From the IMG/VR virus record IMGVR_UViG_3300029922_000001, positions 310,001 through 374,000 of that record: a DNA stretch of 64,000 nt, one strand, 5' to 3'. The notes beneath the pieces were generated by a model. That model made no database searches and was not told the DNA's origin. It saw only the letters and a list, made by a program, of their open reading frames with translations. Each line of letters starts with the position of its first letter. Positions within the stretch are counted from its first letter, which is position 1. This document shows positions 6,745 to 58,086 of this stretch, in pieces. Position numbers and translations under genes: made by a program.

Positions 6745-6758
6745 ATGATGGGTATAAT
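6745..6758 (+). promoter_or_regulatory. -10 box (TGGGTATAAT) driving ncRNA locus A
   Basis: TATAAT at 6753-6758, 5-6 nt before the tRNA-like unit. Confidence 0.7.
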
Positions 6759-6763
6759 ATATT

Positions 6764-6840
6764 TGCGGTTTAGAGTTCTAGTGAACTCACAAGTTTCATA
6801 AGCTTGTCCAGAATAGTGCGATTCTATTAACACGCACCCA
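6764..6840 (+). tRNA. deviant tRNA-like RNA, anticodon CAT, encoded CCA
   Basis: cloverleaf TGCGGTT-TA-GAGT(TCTAGTGA)ACTC-A-CAAGT(TTCATAA)GCTTG-TCCAG-AATAG(TGCGATT)CTATT-AACACGCA-C-CCA; bulged acceptor stem, no D-loop GG, T-loop TGC. Confidence 0.6.
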
Positions 6841-6849
6841 CGAGACTTG

Positions 6850-6914
6850 CTCTGAGAAAACCTGGTTAAAATTCGGTTTTCAGTTAGAAAATCTTTAAAG
6901 AATAGGACTCAGAG
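6850..6914 (+). ncRNA. tRNA-sized multi-arm RNA unit, possibly a degenerate tRNA
   Basis: 7-bp closing stem CTCTGAG/CTCAGAG with internal hairpin AAAACC/GGTTTT; CGAGA at 6919. Confidence 0.4.
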
Positions 6915-6918
6915 ATTG

Positions 6919-7181
6919 CGAGAATTTTATTTAGCAGTAATCAGGCTTAGTGTTGTTGAATCCTGAACAACATGAAAAGAATAAAAGATCGAATAAAGAT
7001 ACTCGTAAGAGTTGAGGGTTTCTAGCTTCCCCCAAAAAGTCTAGAGGACGAGAATTTATTCAGCAGTAGTTAAGCTAGTTTTGAGCGAATGGATCAAAAT
7101 GAAAAGAATAAACGATCATTAAGATACTTGCAAGAGTTGAGGGTTTTCTGGCTTTTCCCGCATAAAAGTTAAGGGACGAGA
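6919..7181 (+). ncRNA. two tandem ~130-nt structured RNA repeats
   Basis: shared blocks AGCAGTA.T.A.GCT, ATGAAAAGAATAAA.GATC, GATACT.G.AAGAGTTGAGGGTTT, GGACGAGA; stems differ in sequence but keep pairing. Confidence 0.7.
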
Positions 7182-7216
7182 GTTTTGTGTTTGTGTTTGT
7201 ATTTATATTGAATTGA

Positions 7217-7250
7217 AAGCCTTTGGAATTTTCCAAAGGCTTCTTTTTAT
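7217..7250 (+). terminator. intrinsic terminator of ncRNA locus A
   Basis: AAGCCTTTGGAA-TT-TTCCAAAGGCTT hairpin followed by a T-tract. Confidence 0.8.
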
Positions 7251-43601: not shown

Positions 43602-43672
43602 GTCTTAGAAGCATTTTGGTGATGCAAGGGACTCTAAATCCCTATAACGGAGTTCGAATCTCCGCTAAGACG
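43602..43672 (+). tRNA. amber suppressor tRNA (anticodon CTA)
   Basis: GTCTTAG-AA-GCAT(TTTGGTG)ATGC-A-AGGGA(CTCTAAA)TCCCT-ATAA-CGGAG(TTCGAAT)CTCCG-CTAAGAC-G; no encoded CCA. Confidence 0.9.
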
Positions 43673-43682
43673 CGAGAAAAAT

Positions 43683-44133: not shown

Positions 44134-44367
44134 ATGAAGAATTATTATAGCTCTGAAAAAATCAACGAAAGAATTAATGAAAGAACTAAGATTTATGATT
44201 TGCTTGCAGAAGTAATTGGAAAACCTAGTTTTCTTAATGAATTGCAAAAAAGATATCCCAATGTTGATTGGAACCAAGTACAATATGATGATGGTCAAAC
44301 TAGTTTAATGCACGTTCAGAATGATATTGAACATTTAAATATTGACGCGACAATTTACTACCCATAA
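44134..44367 (+). CDS. hypothetical protein
   Basis: class II promoter. Confidence 0.7.
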   Translation: MKNYYSSEKINERINERTKIYDLLAEVIGKPSFLNELQKRYPNVDWNQVQYDDGQTSLMHVQNDIEHLNIDATIYYP

Positions 44368-44368
44368 T

Positions 44369-44989
44369 ATGCTATATACATTTGATAAAGAATACACATT
44401 CTCCATTACAGACGCTGAAATCAAGCGTTGTGAAGAATTCGCAGATGCTTCTACAAACGACTATTGGAAGCGCAACCAAACTGATTCAGATCGAATCAAA
44501 CAACAGATTGTTTTCGGAAAACTAGGAGAGCTAGTTGCCGCTAAGTTCCTTGTACGACATTTGAAACAACCTGTTATGGAACCAGACTTCCGCATTTACA
44601 CTAGAGATACCAAAAGTTGGGATGCGGACTTCCCCTATAAGTCATTAGGACTTGGAAATAAGAATTTCCATGTTAAGGCTTATGCTCCAAGTGATAAACC
44701 AGAATCATGGGCATTTCAATTTAAGAACAAGAGTGGCAACGGTGGAACCGATAAGCTATTTGAGAACTTCCCAGAACATAAGAAGGATTGTGTTATCTGT
44801 GTTTTGGTTGATGTAGATAATAAAAAGGGCTACATCAGAGTATTGGCTAATTGGGGAGACTTGCATTATCTTCTACGTGATCCAATATCTTATCAATTGA
44901 GAGGATTGAAGAAGTTCCTTTATTATGAGGACCTTATCAATCTCAAGAACGAAGAAAAAGATAGTGAAAAATCTGATTCAGAAGCTTGA
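44369..44989 (+). CDS. conserved phage protein, possible PD-(D/E)XK fold
   Basis: GKLGELVA, PDF.IY, WDADF, HVKA. Confidence 0.6.
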   Translation: MLYTFDKEYTFSITDAEIKRCEEFADASTNDYWKRNQTDSDRIKQQIVFGKLGELVAAKFLVRHLKQPVMEPDFRIYTRDTKSWDADFPYKSLGLGNKNFHVKAYAPSDKPESWAFQFKNKSGNGGTDKLFENFPEHKKDCVICVLVDVDNKKGYIRVLANWGDLHYLLRDPISYQLRGLKKFLYYEDLINLKNEEKDSEKSDSEA

Positions 44990-45014
44990 CAAAGACTAGG
45001 AAGATGGGTATAAT
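44986..45014 (+). promoter_or_regulatory. consensus sigma70 promoter
   Basis: TTGACA-17-TATAAT. Confidence 0.85.
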
Positions 45015-45019
45015 GAATA

Positions 45020-45590
45020 CGTTGCAGGGTTGAGAGACTGTAGCTGGAGCCTCCTAAAAAGGTTTGGTTGGATTCCTTGTAAAAATCCAACATGAAACCG
45101 AGAGGAATGACCCATAACTTAGCAGACCTCTTTCTAGCGGGGGTTCTCGAAAAAGCTAGAAACCGAGGGGCTGTTCGATTTCAGCGATTGTAACCTTTCT
45201 TAGTAGGATTCTCGAAAACTAAGAACCGAGAAGGTGTATTAATGGCTTCTTTCCTGGTAGAAGTTCTCGAAAAACTAGGAACCGAGAGTTGATTTTAAGT
45301 TCAATCATTGCCTTGCTTGTTGGGTTCTCGAAAAAACAAGCTCCTTCCGAGATAGATCGTCTAACGATCACGCAGAAAAATAGTGGGGTGTTCTCGGACT
45401 CCAGGTACCAACTATGAAGTATGAAGTAAAGTAAACGAAAAATAATTGTCCCATGAGATTGGGTTGACCAACTCCGCAAGTTTAAGCGACTGATTAACTA
45501 TGCGTAAAAGTAAAAAGTGCAAATATTATAAATGGCGTAAGTAGTTTATTTTGCGAATTTTCCTCAGAAATGAGGGAAAACGAGAAAATA
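45020..45590 (+). ncRNA. ncRNA locus C with repeated TTCTCGAAA-loop hairpins or pseudoknots
   Basis: four units near 45128-45170, 45193-45235, 45245-45290 and 45312-45352, plus a fifth GTTCTCG loop near 45390; no credible ORF. Confidence 0.7.
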
Positions 45591-45607
45591 TGATGGTATA
45601 ATAAGTT

Positions 45608-46636
45608 ATACAAAAGAACATTGAAAATTGAATATGAGCCGCGCTCAATAAATATCGGAAAAGAACGGTAAAATTGAAGTTTAGTAAATTTAAATCCGTC
45701 ACCTAATCAGGTAAAAACATGAAAGTAAATAGATAATACGGAAATCATTAACTGCTTAGTCAGTTACTATCATTAAGGGGAAAGAAAGAATAAGATAGTC
45801 CACCGACGCGATACATATTAAAGTAGGGTACGAAATAGAAATATGAACGTATCTTGGAATTAATTTTCCAACGAGATTTGTTGAAAAACAAAATAGGGAT
45901 GGGATAGACCGAATAAACGCTTTTGGAGTCTGCAACAGTAGTTGTGACGATGAATTAAGAAGTTAGAAATAATAGTTCACTGGGCACCCATGCGAATTAA
46001 GGATGTCAAGATCGGGAAGGTGGCAAACTTCCCTTGCGAGATGTTAGAAATACTATAAAAGTACACCAACTTAGTTGTGGAAAATTAATTAATTCTAGCA
46101 CTCCGAGATTTATTAGGTGGCAAAACCGCAATATTTATAAGTTGCGTACCTAGCTGTAGGGTGATAGCCTATCCGTTTTTATAGGGTAAACATACAGTCT
46201 AATGAATCTCTAAATTGAAAACTGAATATGGAATAACACTCGCTCTAGAGCTATCGGCTTTTAAACAACCTGGTGCCAAAATAAAGTAACGGCTATAACT
46301 ATATAGTTAGTTTTCGAATTATAGTGAAAGGAATTAATATTCCTAACGAGATTTATATGATCGCAGATTCCGCTTGCAAACATAGTTGGTTTCGGGAGCG
46401 ACGTTAATGGGTATATCCCACGAGATTTTTACAGACTGTTTGATTGGATTATCTAACAAAACATAAAGAACATCAACACTAAACCGCAAAAGAAAGAGTC
46501 ATGTACTACCATGAACGCTTTTGCATTTTTACCATTCTGTTATTTGTTTGTAAGAATCTTCTGGAGCAATTGTAGTAGTTGCTTGGTTATTGTATCCCTT
46601 TCATTTCAATTTGCCCTACCCACAAGGTGGGGCAAA
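45608..46636 (+). ncRNA. large (~1 kb) ncRNA locus D
   Basis: own TGGTATAAT (-10 near 45597), boxA-like elements at 45616 and 46214, many hairpins, five hairpin-CGAGA ends, terminal hairpin 46610-46636. Confidence 0.65.
46610..46636 (+). terminator. terminator-like hairpin
   Basis: TTTGCCCTACC-CACAA-GGTGGGGCAAA. Confidence 0.6.
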
Positions 46637-46651
46637 ACTGTTTATAATAGC

Positions 46652-46936
46652 ATGATGACAGCTATAGAAATTTTACAAGCAGCCTTGGATAATGATTTAC
46701 GCATTATCACTTTTATCAATGATGGTCAAAATCCACAAATTAAAGGTAAGTATCTAGCACAATTCTTTGTCTTCCCAGTAAAATCAACTGATATTGTTCT
46801 AACTGGTGAAGGTGATACTATCGAACAAGCTATTTTAGATATTCAGCCATATTTCGAAGAGTATGGATATAATATGCCACCCAAAATATCAGAAAAAGAT
46901 GAAGAAATTGATCTAGAAACGAAAACTGAGGTATAA
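46652..46936 (+). CDS. hypothetical protein
   Basis: leaderless after TATAAT; the track start at 46511 runs into the ncRNA. Confidence 0.65.
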   Translation: MMTAIEILQAALDNDLRIITFINDGQNPQIKGKYLAQFFVFPVKSTDIVLTGEGDTIEQAILDIQPYFEEYGYNMPPKISEKDEEIDLETKTEV

Positions 46937-54105: not shown

Positions 54106-55116
54106 ATGACAAAGACATTAGAACAAGAAATCAAACAATTAATTAAAATTTTTAATTTTAATTGTACTATTAACAAATTCGAAGATAAAGTTAATTGGGC
54201 TTATATTTCCAATAATCAAAAATTATCTGAAGAATTCATTGAAAAATATCAAGATAAAGTTAATTGGGCTTATATTTCTATTTATCAAAAACTATCTGAA
54301 GAATTCATTGAAAAATATCAAGATAAAGTTAATTTGGCTTATATTTCTATTTATCAAAAACTATCTGAAGAATTCATTAAGAAATATCAAGATAAAGTTA
54401 ATTGGACTTATATTTCCGAATATCAAAAATTATCTGAAGAATTCATTGAGAAATATCAAGATAAAGTTACTTGGGCTTATATTTTTATTTATCAAAAATT
54501 ATCTGAAGAATTCATTGAGAAATATCAAGATAAAGTTGATTGGGCTAGTATTTCCAATAATCAAAAATTATCTGAAGAATTCATTGAAAAATATCAAGAT
54601 AAAGTTACTTGGGCTTATATTTCCAATAATCAAAAATTATCTGAAGAATTCATTGAGAAATATCAAGATAAAGTTGATTGGGCTTATATTTCCAGTAATC
54701 AAAAATTATCTGAAGAATTCATTGAAAAATACAATTTAACTAAACCAATTAATAATTGGAATTATATTTCTAAAGAAGAAAAATTAGCAATAATCAAGAA
54801 ATGTGGATTATATGAAATTATTGATGATTATATTCTTGCTTATAAATCTACAAGAGAAGATGGATATTCTATTTATAATTATCAATATCAATATAAAGTC
54901 AGTGAAGAATATGAAGCACATTGTAATTGTAATATTGATAATGAAAATAGTTTTGGATTATCAGCTTGGACATATGATAAAGCTTTAAAATATCATAATA
55001 AAGGAGAATTATATAAAGTGAAAATCCATATAGATGATATTGGAGCATTAGTGCATAATGGTTTTAAATTAAGATGTAAAAAAATGAAAGTGTTAGAAAA
55101 AATGGAAATAAATTAA
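54106..55116 (+). CDS. tryptophan-repeat protein (8 x 23-aa QKLSEEFIEKYQDKVxW) with C-terminal domain
   Basis: direct reading of the repeats; class II promoter. Confidence 0.85.
   Translation: MTKTLEQEIKQLIKIFNFNCTINKFEDKVNWAYISNNQKLSEEFIEKYQDKVNWAYISIYQKLSEEFIEKYQDKVNLAYISIYQKLSEEFIKKYQDKVNWTYISEYQKLSEEFIEKYQDKVTWAYIFIYQKLSEEFIEKYQDKVDWASISNNQKLSEEFIEKYQDKVTWAYISNNQKLSEEFIEKYQDKVDWAYISSNQKLSEEFIEKYNLTKPINNWNYISKEEKLAIIKKCGLYEIIDDYILAYKSTREDGYSIYNYQYQYKVSEEYEAHCNCNIDNENSFGLSAWTYDKALKYHNKGELYKVKIHIDDIGALVHNGFKLRCKKMKVLEKMEIN
54181..54732 (+). repeat. 8 tandem 69-bp coding repeats
   Basis: CAAAAA(T/C)TATCTGAAGAATTCATT recurs every 69 nt. Confidence 0.95.
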
Positions 55117-56925: not shown

Positions 56926-58086
56926 ATGGAAGAATTTACAGAAGAAATTAATGAAACATCTAGAAAATTAGCTAGTATTCAAAGGATTTTAGCCTTGGAA
57001 CCAATTCCAGGTGCGGATCGTATTGAAACAGCTACAATTTTGGGATGGAAGGTCGTAGTAGAAAAAGGAAAGTATAGAGTTGGGCAATTAGTTGTATACG
57101 CTGAAATCGACAGTTTATTCCCTGCTAGACCTGAATATGAATTTCTTTCTAAGACTGGTTATCGTATCAAAACCATTCGATTAAAACAGCAGGTAAGCCA
57201 AGGCATTGTATTTCCATTGTCAGTTTTAAAGTGGAATGATAACATCAAAATTATTGGTGACGAAGTGTTGGATGATAATTATGATTACATTAATGATATG
57301 TGGAATGAAGAATCGCCTTTGCTATTACTTCAAGATATGAATAATGATTCAAATCCTGCTATTTTTCTTGCTGAAGGAACTGATGTTACTGAATGGATTG
57401 GTGTAACCAAATATGAACCAGTTGTACCTGCACAATTACGGGGAGTAGCTAGAGGTGGTTTTCCAAGTTGGTTGCATAAGACGGATGAATGTCGGATTCA
57501 GGCTATTCCTGATTTATTAGAAAGACACATTGGTACAACGATTAGAGGACACGAAAAGCTCGACGGCAGTAGTTGTACTATGTATATTCGCAATGGTGAT
57601 TTTGGAGTATGTTCTAGAAATTTGAATTTAAAGCACACTGAAGGTAATAGTTTCTGGGAAATAGCTATGAAGTTCCAAGTTGAAGCCATGATGAAACATT
57701 GTTTCCCAGATTATAATTTTGCAATCCAAGGCGAACTAATCGGTCCTGGCATTCAAGGTAACAAATATAATCTTAGAGAAACAACGATTAGATTGTTTAA
57801 TGTGTTTGATATTGATAAAGATGAATACTTGCATGATCTTGAATCAAAGTATGTTGCTCAACAATTAGGTTTAGAGTGGTGTCCTTGGGTGATGGATTAT
57901 GTTATTACTGAAAACACCACAGTTGAAGAACTATTGTTGTTAGCGCAAGGTCCATCGGCTTTAAATCCTAACCAGGAAAGAGAGGGGTTGGTTTGGCGAC
58001 CATTAGTTGAGTCTAAAGATGATAAAATCGGAAGATTTTCCTTTAAGACTATTTCTAATAAGTTCTTGCTAAAAAACGGAGAGTAA
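56926..58086 (+). CDS. ATP-dependent RNA ligase, DRB0094 family
   Basis: N-terminal OB LASIQRI..LEPIPGADRIE; KTDECRIQ, HEKLDGSS, VCSRN, QGELIGPGIQGN.Y, REGLV, SFKTISNKFLLK. Confidence 0.92.
   Translation: MEEFTEEINETSRKLASIQRILALEPIPGADRIETATILGWKVVVEKGKYRVGQLVVYAEIDSLFPARPEYEFLSKTGYRIKTIRLKQQVSQGIVFPLSVLKWNDNIKIIGDEVLDDNYDYINDMWNEESPLLLLQDMNNDSNPAIFLAEGTDVTEWIGVTKYEPVVPAQLRGVARGGFPSWLHKTDECRIQAIPDLLERHIGTTIRGHEKLDGSSCTMYIRNGDFGVCSRNLNLKHTEGNSFWEIAMKFQVEAMMKHCFPDYNFAIQGELIGPGIQGNKYNLRETTIRLFNVFDIDKDEYLHDLESKYVAQQLGLEWCPWVMDYVITENTTVEELLLLAQGPSALNPNQEREGLVWRPLVESKDDKIGRFSFKTISNKFLLKNGE

What the first reader, a model, noticed from the sequence alone, without database searches (positions are those of the whole stretch)
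45597..46636. ~1 kb ORF-free locus with two rRNA-operon-type boxA-like elements
Seen: GAACATTGAAAATTGAATATG (45616) right after the promoter and ATTGAAAACTGAATATG (46214), numerous hairpins, five hairpin-CGAGA ends and a final terminator. A possible long-range helix joins GTAAAAAGTGCAAA (~45510) to TTTTGCATTTTTAC (~46520). Known: TTGAAAACTGAAT-like boxA sequences recruit Nus antitermination in rRNA operons, and phages encode giant ornate RNAs (GOLLD, ROOL) near tRNAs. Inference: an antiterminated, highly expressed large ncRNA or sRNA polycistron.
Basis: partly seen in the sequence, partly recalled or inferred. Interest (0 to 1): 0.7.

Follow-up and report, generated by a model that had tools for sequence, protein, structure and literature searches.

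The report
Phage small-RNA operon with tRNA-style punctuation
The ORF-free stretch is a modular operon of small structured RNAs in a 441-kb peat phage, punctuated by the same "helix + CGAGA" signal that follows nearly all of the phage's tRNAs; two of its RNAs are abundant in natural metatranscriptomes, one may be circular, and the supposed boxA elements are not antitermination sites.

Summary
CGAGA(T/A) directly follows the 3' end of 23 of 24 tRNAs in this 441-kb phage genome. It also follows plain hairpins in this locus and some ORFs. I therefore read it as a clade-specific RNA 3'-end punctuation mark.

In eight independent peat or permafrost metatranscriptomes, contigs cover only two pieces of the locus:
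- alpha, 45361-45520, 160 nt.
- beta, about 45627-45819, 190 nt.

Beta is a nine-helix RNA, and every helix keeps pairing through compensatory changes in two diverged relatives. The 3' half of "boxA-like" copy 1 is the 5' strand of beta's closing helix. The motif lacks the boxA core, is absent from one relative's beta leader, and copy 2 sits in a cassette missing from a sister strain. One RNA contig joins 45816 back to 45627, exactly at the base of that helix, so beta may be circular. The phage encodes Tpt1 and five RNA-ligase-family genes.

Upstream lie four hairpins with covarying stems and an invariant GUUCUCGAAAA loop. Rfam matches nothing. The sRNA-polycistron reading is supported. Nus/boxA antitermination and a single giant RNA are not.

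The parts
44986..45014 (+). Promoter P1, TTGACA-17-TATAAT (12 of 12 consensus positions)
   Evidence: Conserved in L150 and L300.
45127..45354 (+). Region A: four tandem hairpin units (45127-45170, 45193-45233, 45247-45289, 45309-45354). Each has a 7-9 bp stem that varies, an invariant loop GUUCUCGAAAA and a tail (C)CGAGR(R), which reads CGAGG in unit 1.
   Evidence: Stem covariation: 89.8% of cells paired, 0 of 500 shuffles reach that, 4 of 7 pairs have compensatory changes. Model R2 finds units only here, in L150 and in L300, and nowhere else in the 441-kb genome.
45361..45520 (+). RNA alpha, a discrete ~160-nt RNA
   Evidence: Metatranscriptome contigs in 4 runs. Two runs (X13, X18) share the ends 45361 and 45520. 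All five differences from L150 are compatible with predicted pairing. No Rfam match.
45558..45586 (+). 9-bp GAAA-tetraloop hairpin followed by A-CGAGAA
45594..45602 (+). Promoter P2, extended -10 TGGTATAAT
   Evidence: Read from the sequence. The equivalent GGATATAAT or GGGTATAAT stands before beta in L105 and L300.
45616..45636 (+). 'boxA-like' copy 1: the beta leader plus the 5' strand of helix P1a (45631-45636)
45627..45819 (+). RNA beta: a 190-nt unit (45627..45630 to 45816..45819) with helices P1a, P1b, P2, P3, P3.1, P4, P5, P6 and P7
   Evidence: RNA contigs in 8 runs never extend beyond 45622-45816. A back-joint 45816->45627 appears in X25. Homologues: L105 (blastn E 7e-13), L150, and L300 (R1 E 1.8e-5). 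Covariation.
45854..45877 (+). Hairpin UUGGAA/UUCCAA followed by CGAGAU
   Evidence: In L150 a different hairpin (AUAGG/CCUAU) followed by A-CGAGAA stands at the same place.
45878..46042 (+). Cassette B2, ending in hairpin 46014-46033 and CGAGAU at 46037
   Evidence: Its 5' part (45855-46006) is replaced by 320 unrelated nt in L150.
46043..46109 (+). Cassette B3: 7-bp closing helix GUUAGAA/UUCUAGC, then ACUC-CGAGAU
46110..46209 (+). Cassette B4. A similar element stands upstream of beta in L300.
46210..46351 (+). Strain-variable cassette B5 with 'boxA-like' copy 2 (46214-46230), hairpin 46329-46344 and CGAGA at 46347
   Evidence: Absent from L150 and L151, where 5 nt stand in its place.
46352..46426 (+). 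Cassette B6, ending in hairpin 46408-46420 and CGAGAU at 46421
   Evidence: L150 carries a 302-nt insertion here, flanked by CGAGA on both sides.
46427..46636 (+). 3' tail, with a terminator-like hairpin at 46610-46636 (11 bp, weak U-run)
   Evidence: 98-100% identical in L150.

Best explanation
The gap 44990-46651 is a modular operon of small non-coding RNAs in a huge (441-kb) peat phage. Two host-type promoters, P1 and P2, drive transcripts that are divided into cassettes. Each cassette ends with a helix followed within 0-4 nt by CGAGA(U/A). The same mark directly follows the discriminator of nearly every tRNA of this phage.

I infer that it is a clade-specific RNA 3'-end processing signal, read by a so far unidentified endoribonuclease or by the host's tRNA 3'-processing machinery, so that non-tRNA RNAs are released the way tRNAs are.

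At least two products accumulate in nature:
- alpha, 160 nt.
- beta, 190 nt. It is a nine-helix RNA whose closing helix uses part of the 'boxA-like' sequence. Its two ends lie side by side at the base of that helix and may be ligated into a circle.

The upstream hairpin array, with its invariant loop GUUCUCGAAAA, is most likely a multivalent binding platform (a sponge) for a protein, or for the CGAGAA motif to which UUCUCG is complementary.

Shown: anatomy, conservation, covariation, expression and RNA boundaries. Inferred: the cleavage role of CGAGA, the enzyme, circularity and cellular function.
For: 1. CGAGA starts within -2 to +1 nt of the ARAGORN 3' end in 23 of 24 tRNAs. It is present after solitary and last-in-array tRNAs but absent upstream of first-in-array tRNAs, so it is a trailer and not a leader.
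2. The same mark follows plain hairpins in this locus, in a second sRNA array in the window, and 11-58 nt after some ORF ends.
3. In L150 the hairpin after beta has a different sequence but keeps CGAGA. Two of the three strain indels in the locus involve CGAGA: the L150-specific insertion is flanked by it on both sides, and the window-specific cassette ends with it.
4. In 8 independent metatranscriptome runs, contigs cover only alpha and beta and not the flanking ORFs, with reproducible ends.
5. Beta is conserved in four lineages, and every helix shows compensatory changes. For example, P1a is AAUAUG/CAUAUU in the window and UAAGAAG/CUUCUUA in L105, and P3.1 is AAU/AUU, GGU/ACC and AGU/GCU.
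6. Region A stems covary around an invariant loop.
7. The back-joint 45816->45627 lies at the base of P1a. The genome encodes Tpt1 and five RNA-ligase-family genes.
Against: - The RNA evidence is assembled contigs without strand information, about one read length each. Depths of 4-11 may partly be duplicates.
- The observed ends of alpha and beta do not coincide with CGAGA sites. The 5' end of alpha lies 8 nt after one, and the 3' end of beta lies about 55 nt before the next. Further trimming or other determinants are therefore needed.
- No cleavage has been shown, and no phage RNase Z-like enzyme, CCA-adding enzyme or RtcB was found.
- In L105 one tRNA has an encoded CCA and no CGAGA.
- CGAGA is less frequent on the sense strand of ORFs than on the antisense strand, but so are the other CGAG-containing words tested (CGAGT, CGAGG), so this is not evidence of avoidance.
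- The circle rests on one contig with a 3-nt microhomology, which reverse-transcriptase template switching can also produce.
- The function of every RNA in the locus is unknown.
Confidence: 0.6

Rival explanations
1. One reading: the two TTGAAAAYTGAAT elements are rrn-type boxA sites that load NusB/S10 and make transcription of a long ncRNA termination-resistant.
For: Copy 1 lies in the transcribed leader about 14 nt after the -10 element, and a structured RNA follows it. Both copies share UUGAAA with the B. subtilis boxA consensus. The locus holds many hairpins that RNA polymerase must pass.
Against: - The (C/U)CUUU core is missing.
- The 3' half pairs in helix P1a and covaries as a helix strand, not as a linear motif.
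- The motif is not conserved in the L300 beta leader.
- Copy 2 is dispensable in the sister strain.
- The third genomic copy is promoter-upstream.
- The 14-mer is not beyond chance in shuffles.
Confidence: 0.06
2. CGAGA is mainly a DNA-level site. The RNA cassettes, tRNAs included, are gained and lost by site-specific or microhomology recombination at CGAGA, as in an integron-like gene-cassette array, and the motif has no role in RNA.
For: The L150-specific 302-nt insertion is flanked by CGAGA on both sides. The window-specific 142-nt cassette ends in CGAGA. Region A units differ in number between strains. The conserved neighbouring ORF has a fold resembling phage endonucleases (a lead only).
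Against: - The motif is strictly on the transcribed strand and abuts the tRNA discriminator.
- The left border of the window-specific cassette has no CGAGA.
- Five bases of microhomology at the ends of repeated units are expected under any model.
- No integrase-type gene was identified next to the locus.
- This model is not exclusive with the processing model.
Confidence: 0.15
3. Hairpin + CGAGA is a transcription termination signal, for example for a phage-modified RNA polymerase, and not a processing site.
For: It follows some ORF ends and precedes promoters, for example CGAGAA-N10-TATAAT at 45581-45602. The hairpins lack U-tracts, so an alternative terminator type is conceivable.
Against: In tRNA arrays the spacers are only about 12 nt (CGAGAUAAAUAU) and hold no promoter able to restart transcription before the next tRNA. 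Termination after every tRNA would therefore silence the array. The observed 3' ends of alpha and beta are not at these sites.
Confidence: 0.1
4. The locus is decayed remnants of a former tRNA or repeat array with no present function. The RNA contigs would reflect only stable degradation fragments.
For: Turnover of cassettes between strains is fast. Predicted folding energies are ordinary. No family match was found.
Against: - Compensatory changes appear in all nine beta helices across lineages whose flanking protein is about 63% identical.
- The region A loop is invariant while its stems covary across lineages.
- The dedicated consensus promoters are conserved.
- The same two RNAs are found in 8 environmental RNA data sets.
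Confidence: 0.05

Closest known systems
Stable non-tRNA RNAs co-transcribed and co-processed with phage tRNAs (T4 tRNA-cluster RNAs C and D; P1/P7 C4 and P4 CI RNAs matured by RNase P). From my own knowledge, not checked here.
   Same: Phage-encoded small RNAs that share the flanking signals and maturation logic of tRNAs. They are discrete stable products cut from polycistronic precursors.
   Different: Here the shared signal is a 3' trailer word (CGAGA) that I have not seen described. It also follows plain hairpins and some ORFs. The array is cassette-like and strain-variable. The RNAs, alpha, beta and the loop-conserved hairpins, have no known homologues.
tRNA punctuation and tRNA-like 3'-end processing (mitochondrial polycistrons; MALAT1 mascRNA; MHV68 tRNA-miRNA units cut by tRNase Z). 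From my own knowledge.
   Same: A helix that resembles a tRNA acceptor end marks where a longer transcript is cut.
   Different: Most hairpins here have only 4-9 bp (one has 12) and no T-arm, which is shorter than canonical RNase Z substrates. A fixed pentamer follows the helix. Neither the enzyme nor the cleavage has been shown.
rrn-operon boxA / Nus antitermination (PMC13753749)
   Same: An A/U-rich element containing UUGAAA in the leader of a non-coding operon, downstream of a strong promoter.
   Different: The core CUUU is missing. The element is part of a base-paired helix, is not conserved in relatives and is dispensable in a sister strain.
Bacterial ncRNAs with both linear and circular forms (DucS of Bacillus altitudinis, PMC10504365) and circles made by permuted group II introns (from my own knowledge)
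   Same: Beta shows a permuted (back-joined) sequence in an RNA library. Its ends are held together by a terminal helix.
   Different: The evidence is one contig in one run. No intron domains were detected. The RNA is phage-encoded, and the phage carries its own ligases and Tpt1.
Tandem-repeat RNA sponges and antitoxins (CsrB-type sponges, ToxI-type type III antitoxins). From my own knowledge.
   Same: Region A is a tandem array of similar hairpins with one conserved single-stranded loop motif.
   Different: The loops hold no GGA motifs. The units measure 55-65 nt and have variable stems. No toxin ORF follows the array; RNA alpha does.

Membership tests
rrn-type boxA (NusB/S10 site) | Match to the core consensus (E. 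coli UGCUCUUUAACA; B. subtilis AUGAUCUUUGAAA) | tested here: not met
   The elements read GAACAUUGAAAAUUG and CUAAAUUGAAAACUG. Only UUGAAA is shared and the CUUU core is absent.
rrn-type boxA (NusB/S10 site) | Single-stranded linear element conserved in sequence among relatives | tested here: not met
   The 3' half is the 5' strand of P1a and covaries. L105 reads CUUGAAAGCUUGAUAAG. The motif is absent from the L300 leader. Copy 2 is absent from L150.
rrn-type boxA (NusB/S10 site) | Binds NusB/S10 and confers read-through | not testable with these tools
   The host is unknown and no binding assay is possible.
GOLLD / ROOL / OLE / HEARO / group I and II introns / self-cleaving ribozymes (Rfam 15) | Covariance-model match | tested here: not met
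   At gathering threshold the window gives only two tRNAs. At E up to 10 on 44900-46750 there are only two chance-level hits, to MIR5286 and cow-rumen-1.
tRNA-co-processed phage small RNAs | Shares flanking processing signals with the phage's tRNAs | tested here: met
   The CGAGA trailer follows 23 of 24 tRNAs and the hairpins of the locus.
tRNA-co-processed phage small RNAs | Discrete stable products accumulate | tested here: met
   Alpha (160 nt) and beta (190 nt) contigs with reproducible ends in 4 and 7 RNA runs respectively, 8 runs in all.
tRNA-co-processed phage small RNAs | Cleavage by RNase P or RNase Z at the shared signal | not testable with these tools
   Only contigs were available. 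The observed ends of alpha and beta do not coincide with CGAGA.
Covalently circular RNA | Back-joined (permuted) sequence in RNA | tested here: inconclusive
   One 152-nt contig (depth 7.9) in X25 joins 45816 to 45627, with 3 nt of microhomology. The other 7 runs show none.
Covalently circular RNA | Resistance to RNase R, a junction seen independently of RT artefacts, and absence of a tandem DNA copy | tested here: inconclusive
   Beta is single-copy in four assemblies (window, L168, L150/L151, L105).
Type III toxin-antitoxin antitoxin array (ToxI-like), considered for region A | Tandem near-identical repeats directly followed by a toxin ORF | tested here: not met
   Stems differ between units, and RNA alpha follows rather than an ORF.

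The most novel reading that the evidence does not exclude
Beta is a DNA-encoded, non-intronic circular RNA of 190 nt. The precursor would be cut on both sides of closing helix P1a. The juxtaposed ends would then be sealed by one of the phage's own RNA ligases, with Tpt1 removing a junction 2'-phosphate, to give an exonuclease-proof structured circle capped by a palindromic hairpin (CAUAUU-G-AAUAUG). An equivalent 3-nt repeat (CUU) at the corresponding positions in L105 would allow the same closure. Together with the clade-wide helix + CGAGA punctuation, this would define a phage-specific RNA maturation system that acts on tRNAs and small RNAs alike.
Probability: 0.3. Interest if true: 0.85.

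Novelty: new variant of a known kind. Interest (0 to 1): 0.68.

Why it matters
Huge phages carry large tRNA sets, but little is known about how these are matured or what other RNAs accompany them. Three points stand out here.

1. One short trailer word marks the ends of nearly all tRNAs, several unknown structured RNAs and some mRNAs. This implies a dedicated, testable RNA-processing rule in one phage clade.
2. Two RNAs without known relatives are abundant enough to be assembled from eight peat and permafrost metatranscriptomes while their neighbouring genes are not. The phage invests in them during natural infections.
3. One of them may be circular, in a phage that encodes Tpt1 and five RNA-ligase-family genes. 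That would give these widespread 'RNA repair' genes a constructive substrate.

The case also shows that a look-alike of a known regulatory word (boxA) can simply be one strand of a helix.

Tried and rejected
- Pattern scans of viral contigs for the region A unit, the 17-mer, the tRNA + CGAGA trailer and a beta block returned only chance hits. There was no blastn similarity, and the tRNA trailers in those loci are not CGAGA.
- blastn against GenBank phages found no match.
- A metagenome scan with a beta pattern found only the same genome again, as L168.
- A scan of GTDB genomes for T-loop + CGAGAWAWA gave single hits in many taxa, many of them Bacteroidota. No lineage shows systematic use, so no host signal emerged.
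- Protein-anchored searches worked only through the big protein index. The viral-contig route found nothing useful.
- TAG read-through was considered because of the CTA-anticodon tRNA. It opens no credible ORF, and I did not adopt another code.
- An H-type pseudoknot between the region A loop UUCUCG and its own CGAGA tail was rejected. The connecting loop would be 1 nt across a 7-9 bp stem, and an L300 unit does not keep the complementarity.
- The AAUAU|G in the 'boxA-like' elements was considered as an RNase P site like those in tRNA leaders. It was rejected for beta because RNA contigs and the joint place the 5' end at 45622-45630.
- Paralogues of alpha and beta were sought. blastn and models R1 and R2 found none over the whole genome.
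- Avoidance of CGAGA in the sense strand of ORFs is not specific, because CGAGT and CGAGG, the other CGAG words tested, behave alike.
- Pfam and PHROGs on neighbouring ORFs gave nothing related to RNA.

Full report
**Setting.** The window is bases 310001-374000 of a single 441,498-bp contig with 33.9% G+C, held as a virus record. The sequence is found in peat metagenomes, and the RNA runs that hold parts of it come from peat and permafrost. ARAGORN finds 24 tRNAs and a tmRNA in the genome. The window is densely coding in code 11.

**Observation.**
- The 21-mer lies at 45616-45636, just after an extended -10 promoter (TGGTATAAT, 45594-45602).
- The related 17-mer lies at 46214-46230.
- Five CGAGAT sites each follow a hairpin or closing helix.
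- A terminator-like hairpin lies at 46610-46636.

Six of the window's ten CGAGAT sit on the + strand within 1.1 kb, far beyond chance. The 14-mer is not by itself beyond chance. No credible ORF exists, and reading TAG through does not open one either. Indels of 1, 2 and 14 nt against a sister strain break every frame. Upstream, the gap begins with a perfect TTGACA-17-TATAAT promoter.

**The key to CGAGA.** Genome-wide, CGAGA(T/A) starts within -2 to +1 nt of the ARAGORN 3' end of 23 of 24 tRNAs. Spacers inside tRNA arrays read CGAGAU-AAAUAU followed by G+1. Solitary and last-in-array tRNAs have the motif downstream. First-in-array tRNAs have none upstream. It is therefore a 3' trailer.

The same word follows plain hairpins in this locus, the three repeats of a second ORF-free array at window 6750-7250, a 330-nt unknown RNA inside a tRNA array, and hairpins 11-58 nt after some ORFs. 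It also follows the CTA-anticodon tRNA in relatives L105 and L150. It is not used systematically in other phages or in any bacterial lineage sampled. The phage has no RNase Z-like gene, CCA-adding enzyme or RtcB.

**Relatives.** DNA pattern scans failed. The protein index gave three related lineages, all with the same upstream ORF.

| Locus | Relation to the window | Non-coding gap |
|---|---|---|
| L150 = L151 | 92-98% nt identity | 2.0 kb |
| L105 | upstream ORF 63% aa identity | 1.09 kb |
| L300 | upstream ORF 62% aa identity | contig ends inside the locus |

Against L150 the locus is a mosaic:
- Region A units differ in number and identity.
- Window 45855-46006 is replaced by 320 unrelated nt. 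These start with a different hairpin that keeps A-CGAGAA.
- Window 46210-46351, which holds the second 'boxA-like' element, is missing.
- L150 has a 302-nt insertion flanked by CGAGA on both sides.

The unit of evolution is therefore an RNA cassette that ends in helix + CGAGA.

**Expression.** Eight metatranscriptome runs from several studies hold parts of the locus. Their contigs cover only two pieces and none of the flanking ORFs, region A or 45820-46650.
- Alpha, 45361-45520, appears in four runs. Two runs share both ends.
- Beta appears in seven runs, always within 45622-45816.

The silent flanks argue against DNA carry-over. One caveat applies: these are assembler contigs about one read long, without strand information.

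**Beta.** Window 45608-45837 aligns to L105 3548-3781 at 63% identity, E 7e-13. RNAalifold finds 31 pairs, 11 of them with compensatory changes. A nine-helix model threads through the window, L150 and L105, with compensatory changes in every helix:

| Helix | Window | L150 | L105 |
|---|---|---|---|
| P1a | AAUAUG/CAUAUU | same as window | UAAGAAG/CUUCUUA |
| P1b | CGCG/CGCG | same as window | CGCC/GGCG |
| P2 | UCGG/CCGA | same as window | ACGG/CCGU |
| P3.1 | AAU/AUU | GGU/ACC | AGU/GCU |
| P5 | AUGA/UCAU | same as window | GGAU/AUCC |

L300 keeps GAGCCGCG, an 11-nt bulge and UCGG. Beta is single-copy and matches no Rfam family.

**Consequence for boxA.** The AAUAUG at the end of 'boxA-like' copy 1 is the 5' strand of P1a. 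The motif lacks the CUUU core of the published consensuses. It differs in L105 and is absent from the L300 leader. Copy 2 is dispensable, and the third genomic copy lies upstream of a promoter. boxA membership therefore fails.

**Possible circle.** In run X25 a 152-nt contig (depth 7.9) reads 45739-45816 and continues directly at 45627. The joint has 3 nt of ambiguity (AUU). It lies at the outer end of P1a and would cap that helix with a triloop. L105 has an equivalent 3-nt repeat (CUU) at the same positions. The genome encodes Tpt1 (E 3.6e-45), four PF09414 proteins and one PF09511 RNA-ligase-family protein. Bacterial ncRNAs with both linear and circular forms are known (PMC10504365). End-to-end template switching by reverse transcriptase would give the same joint. 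A tandem DNA copy is unlikely, because beta is single-copy in four assemblies. Either way, the joint fixes the ends of a 190-nt RNA.

**Region A and alpha.** Four units have stems that covary around an invariant loop GUUCUCGAAAA and a CGAGR tail. These units occur only in this locus, in L150 and in L300. UUCUCG is complementary to CGAGAA, but a same-unit pseudoknot is sterically implausible. Pairing in trans, or binding of a protein, is possible but untested. Alpha starts with a degenerate unit of the same kind. Its five differences from L150 all fit predicted pairs.

**Verdict.** The locus is a transcribed, modular small-RNA operon that uses the phage's own tRNA-type punctuation. It is neither a boxA-antiterminated transcript nor one giant RNA. 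The cleavage role of CGAGA, the enzyme, the circularity of beta and the functions of all these RNAs remain inferences.

Noticed in passing
window 6750-7250: A second ORF-free array. After a TATAAT promoter come three ~128-nt direct repeats, each ending in a hairpin followed by CGAGA(A/G) (at 6919, 7049, 7177), and then a canonical terminator at about 7218-7250.
   Followed up: partly
window 43602-43673; genome 172128-172200: Two tRNAs with anticodon CTA (amber-suppressor type; ARAGORN labels them 'Pyl'), although the window's ORFs read open in code 11. Stage-specific TAG recoding was not examined.
   Followed up: no
L153:869-1202 (genome 172369-172702): A ~330-nt non-tRNA RNA inside a tRNA array, closed by a 12-bp helix (UUUGAAUUUUGG/CCAAAAUUCAAA) followed by A-CGAGAU. 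Folding z-score is -2.0 and there is no Rfam match.
   Followed up: partly
L154 / L294 (genome 253600-255100, minus strand); window 57550-58050: IF3-like, Tpt1/KptA (PF01885) and DUF4326-like ORFs lie upstream of a tRNA array, preceded by the third copy of CATTGAAAATTGAATA. The genome has four PF09414 genes and one PF09511 RNA-ligase-family gene, one of them in the window.
   Followed up: partly
window 44342-44989: The ORF directly upstream is syntenic with the RNA locus in all four lineages. It has no Pfam or PHROG match, but its ESM Atlas neighbours include T4 endonuclease IV-like and PvuII-like clusters (TM 0.57 and 0.45). This is a lead that it is a nuclease.
   Followed up: partly
window 54182-54731: Eight tandem copies of a 69-nt unit inside an ORF, in the lowest-GC kilobase of the window (0.234).
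   Followed up: no
window 46643-46657: A TATAAT lies only 3-6 nt before the ATG(s) of the downstream ORF (46652/46655), so this mRNA may be leaderless.
   Followed up: no
L156:575-929 (genome 293574-293927): A phage-encoded tmRNA (Rfam 62.9 bits) with predicted tag GKSYAYVG. Unlike the tRNAs, it is not followed by CGAGA.
   Followed up: no
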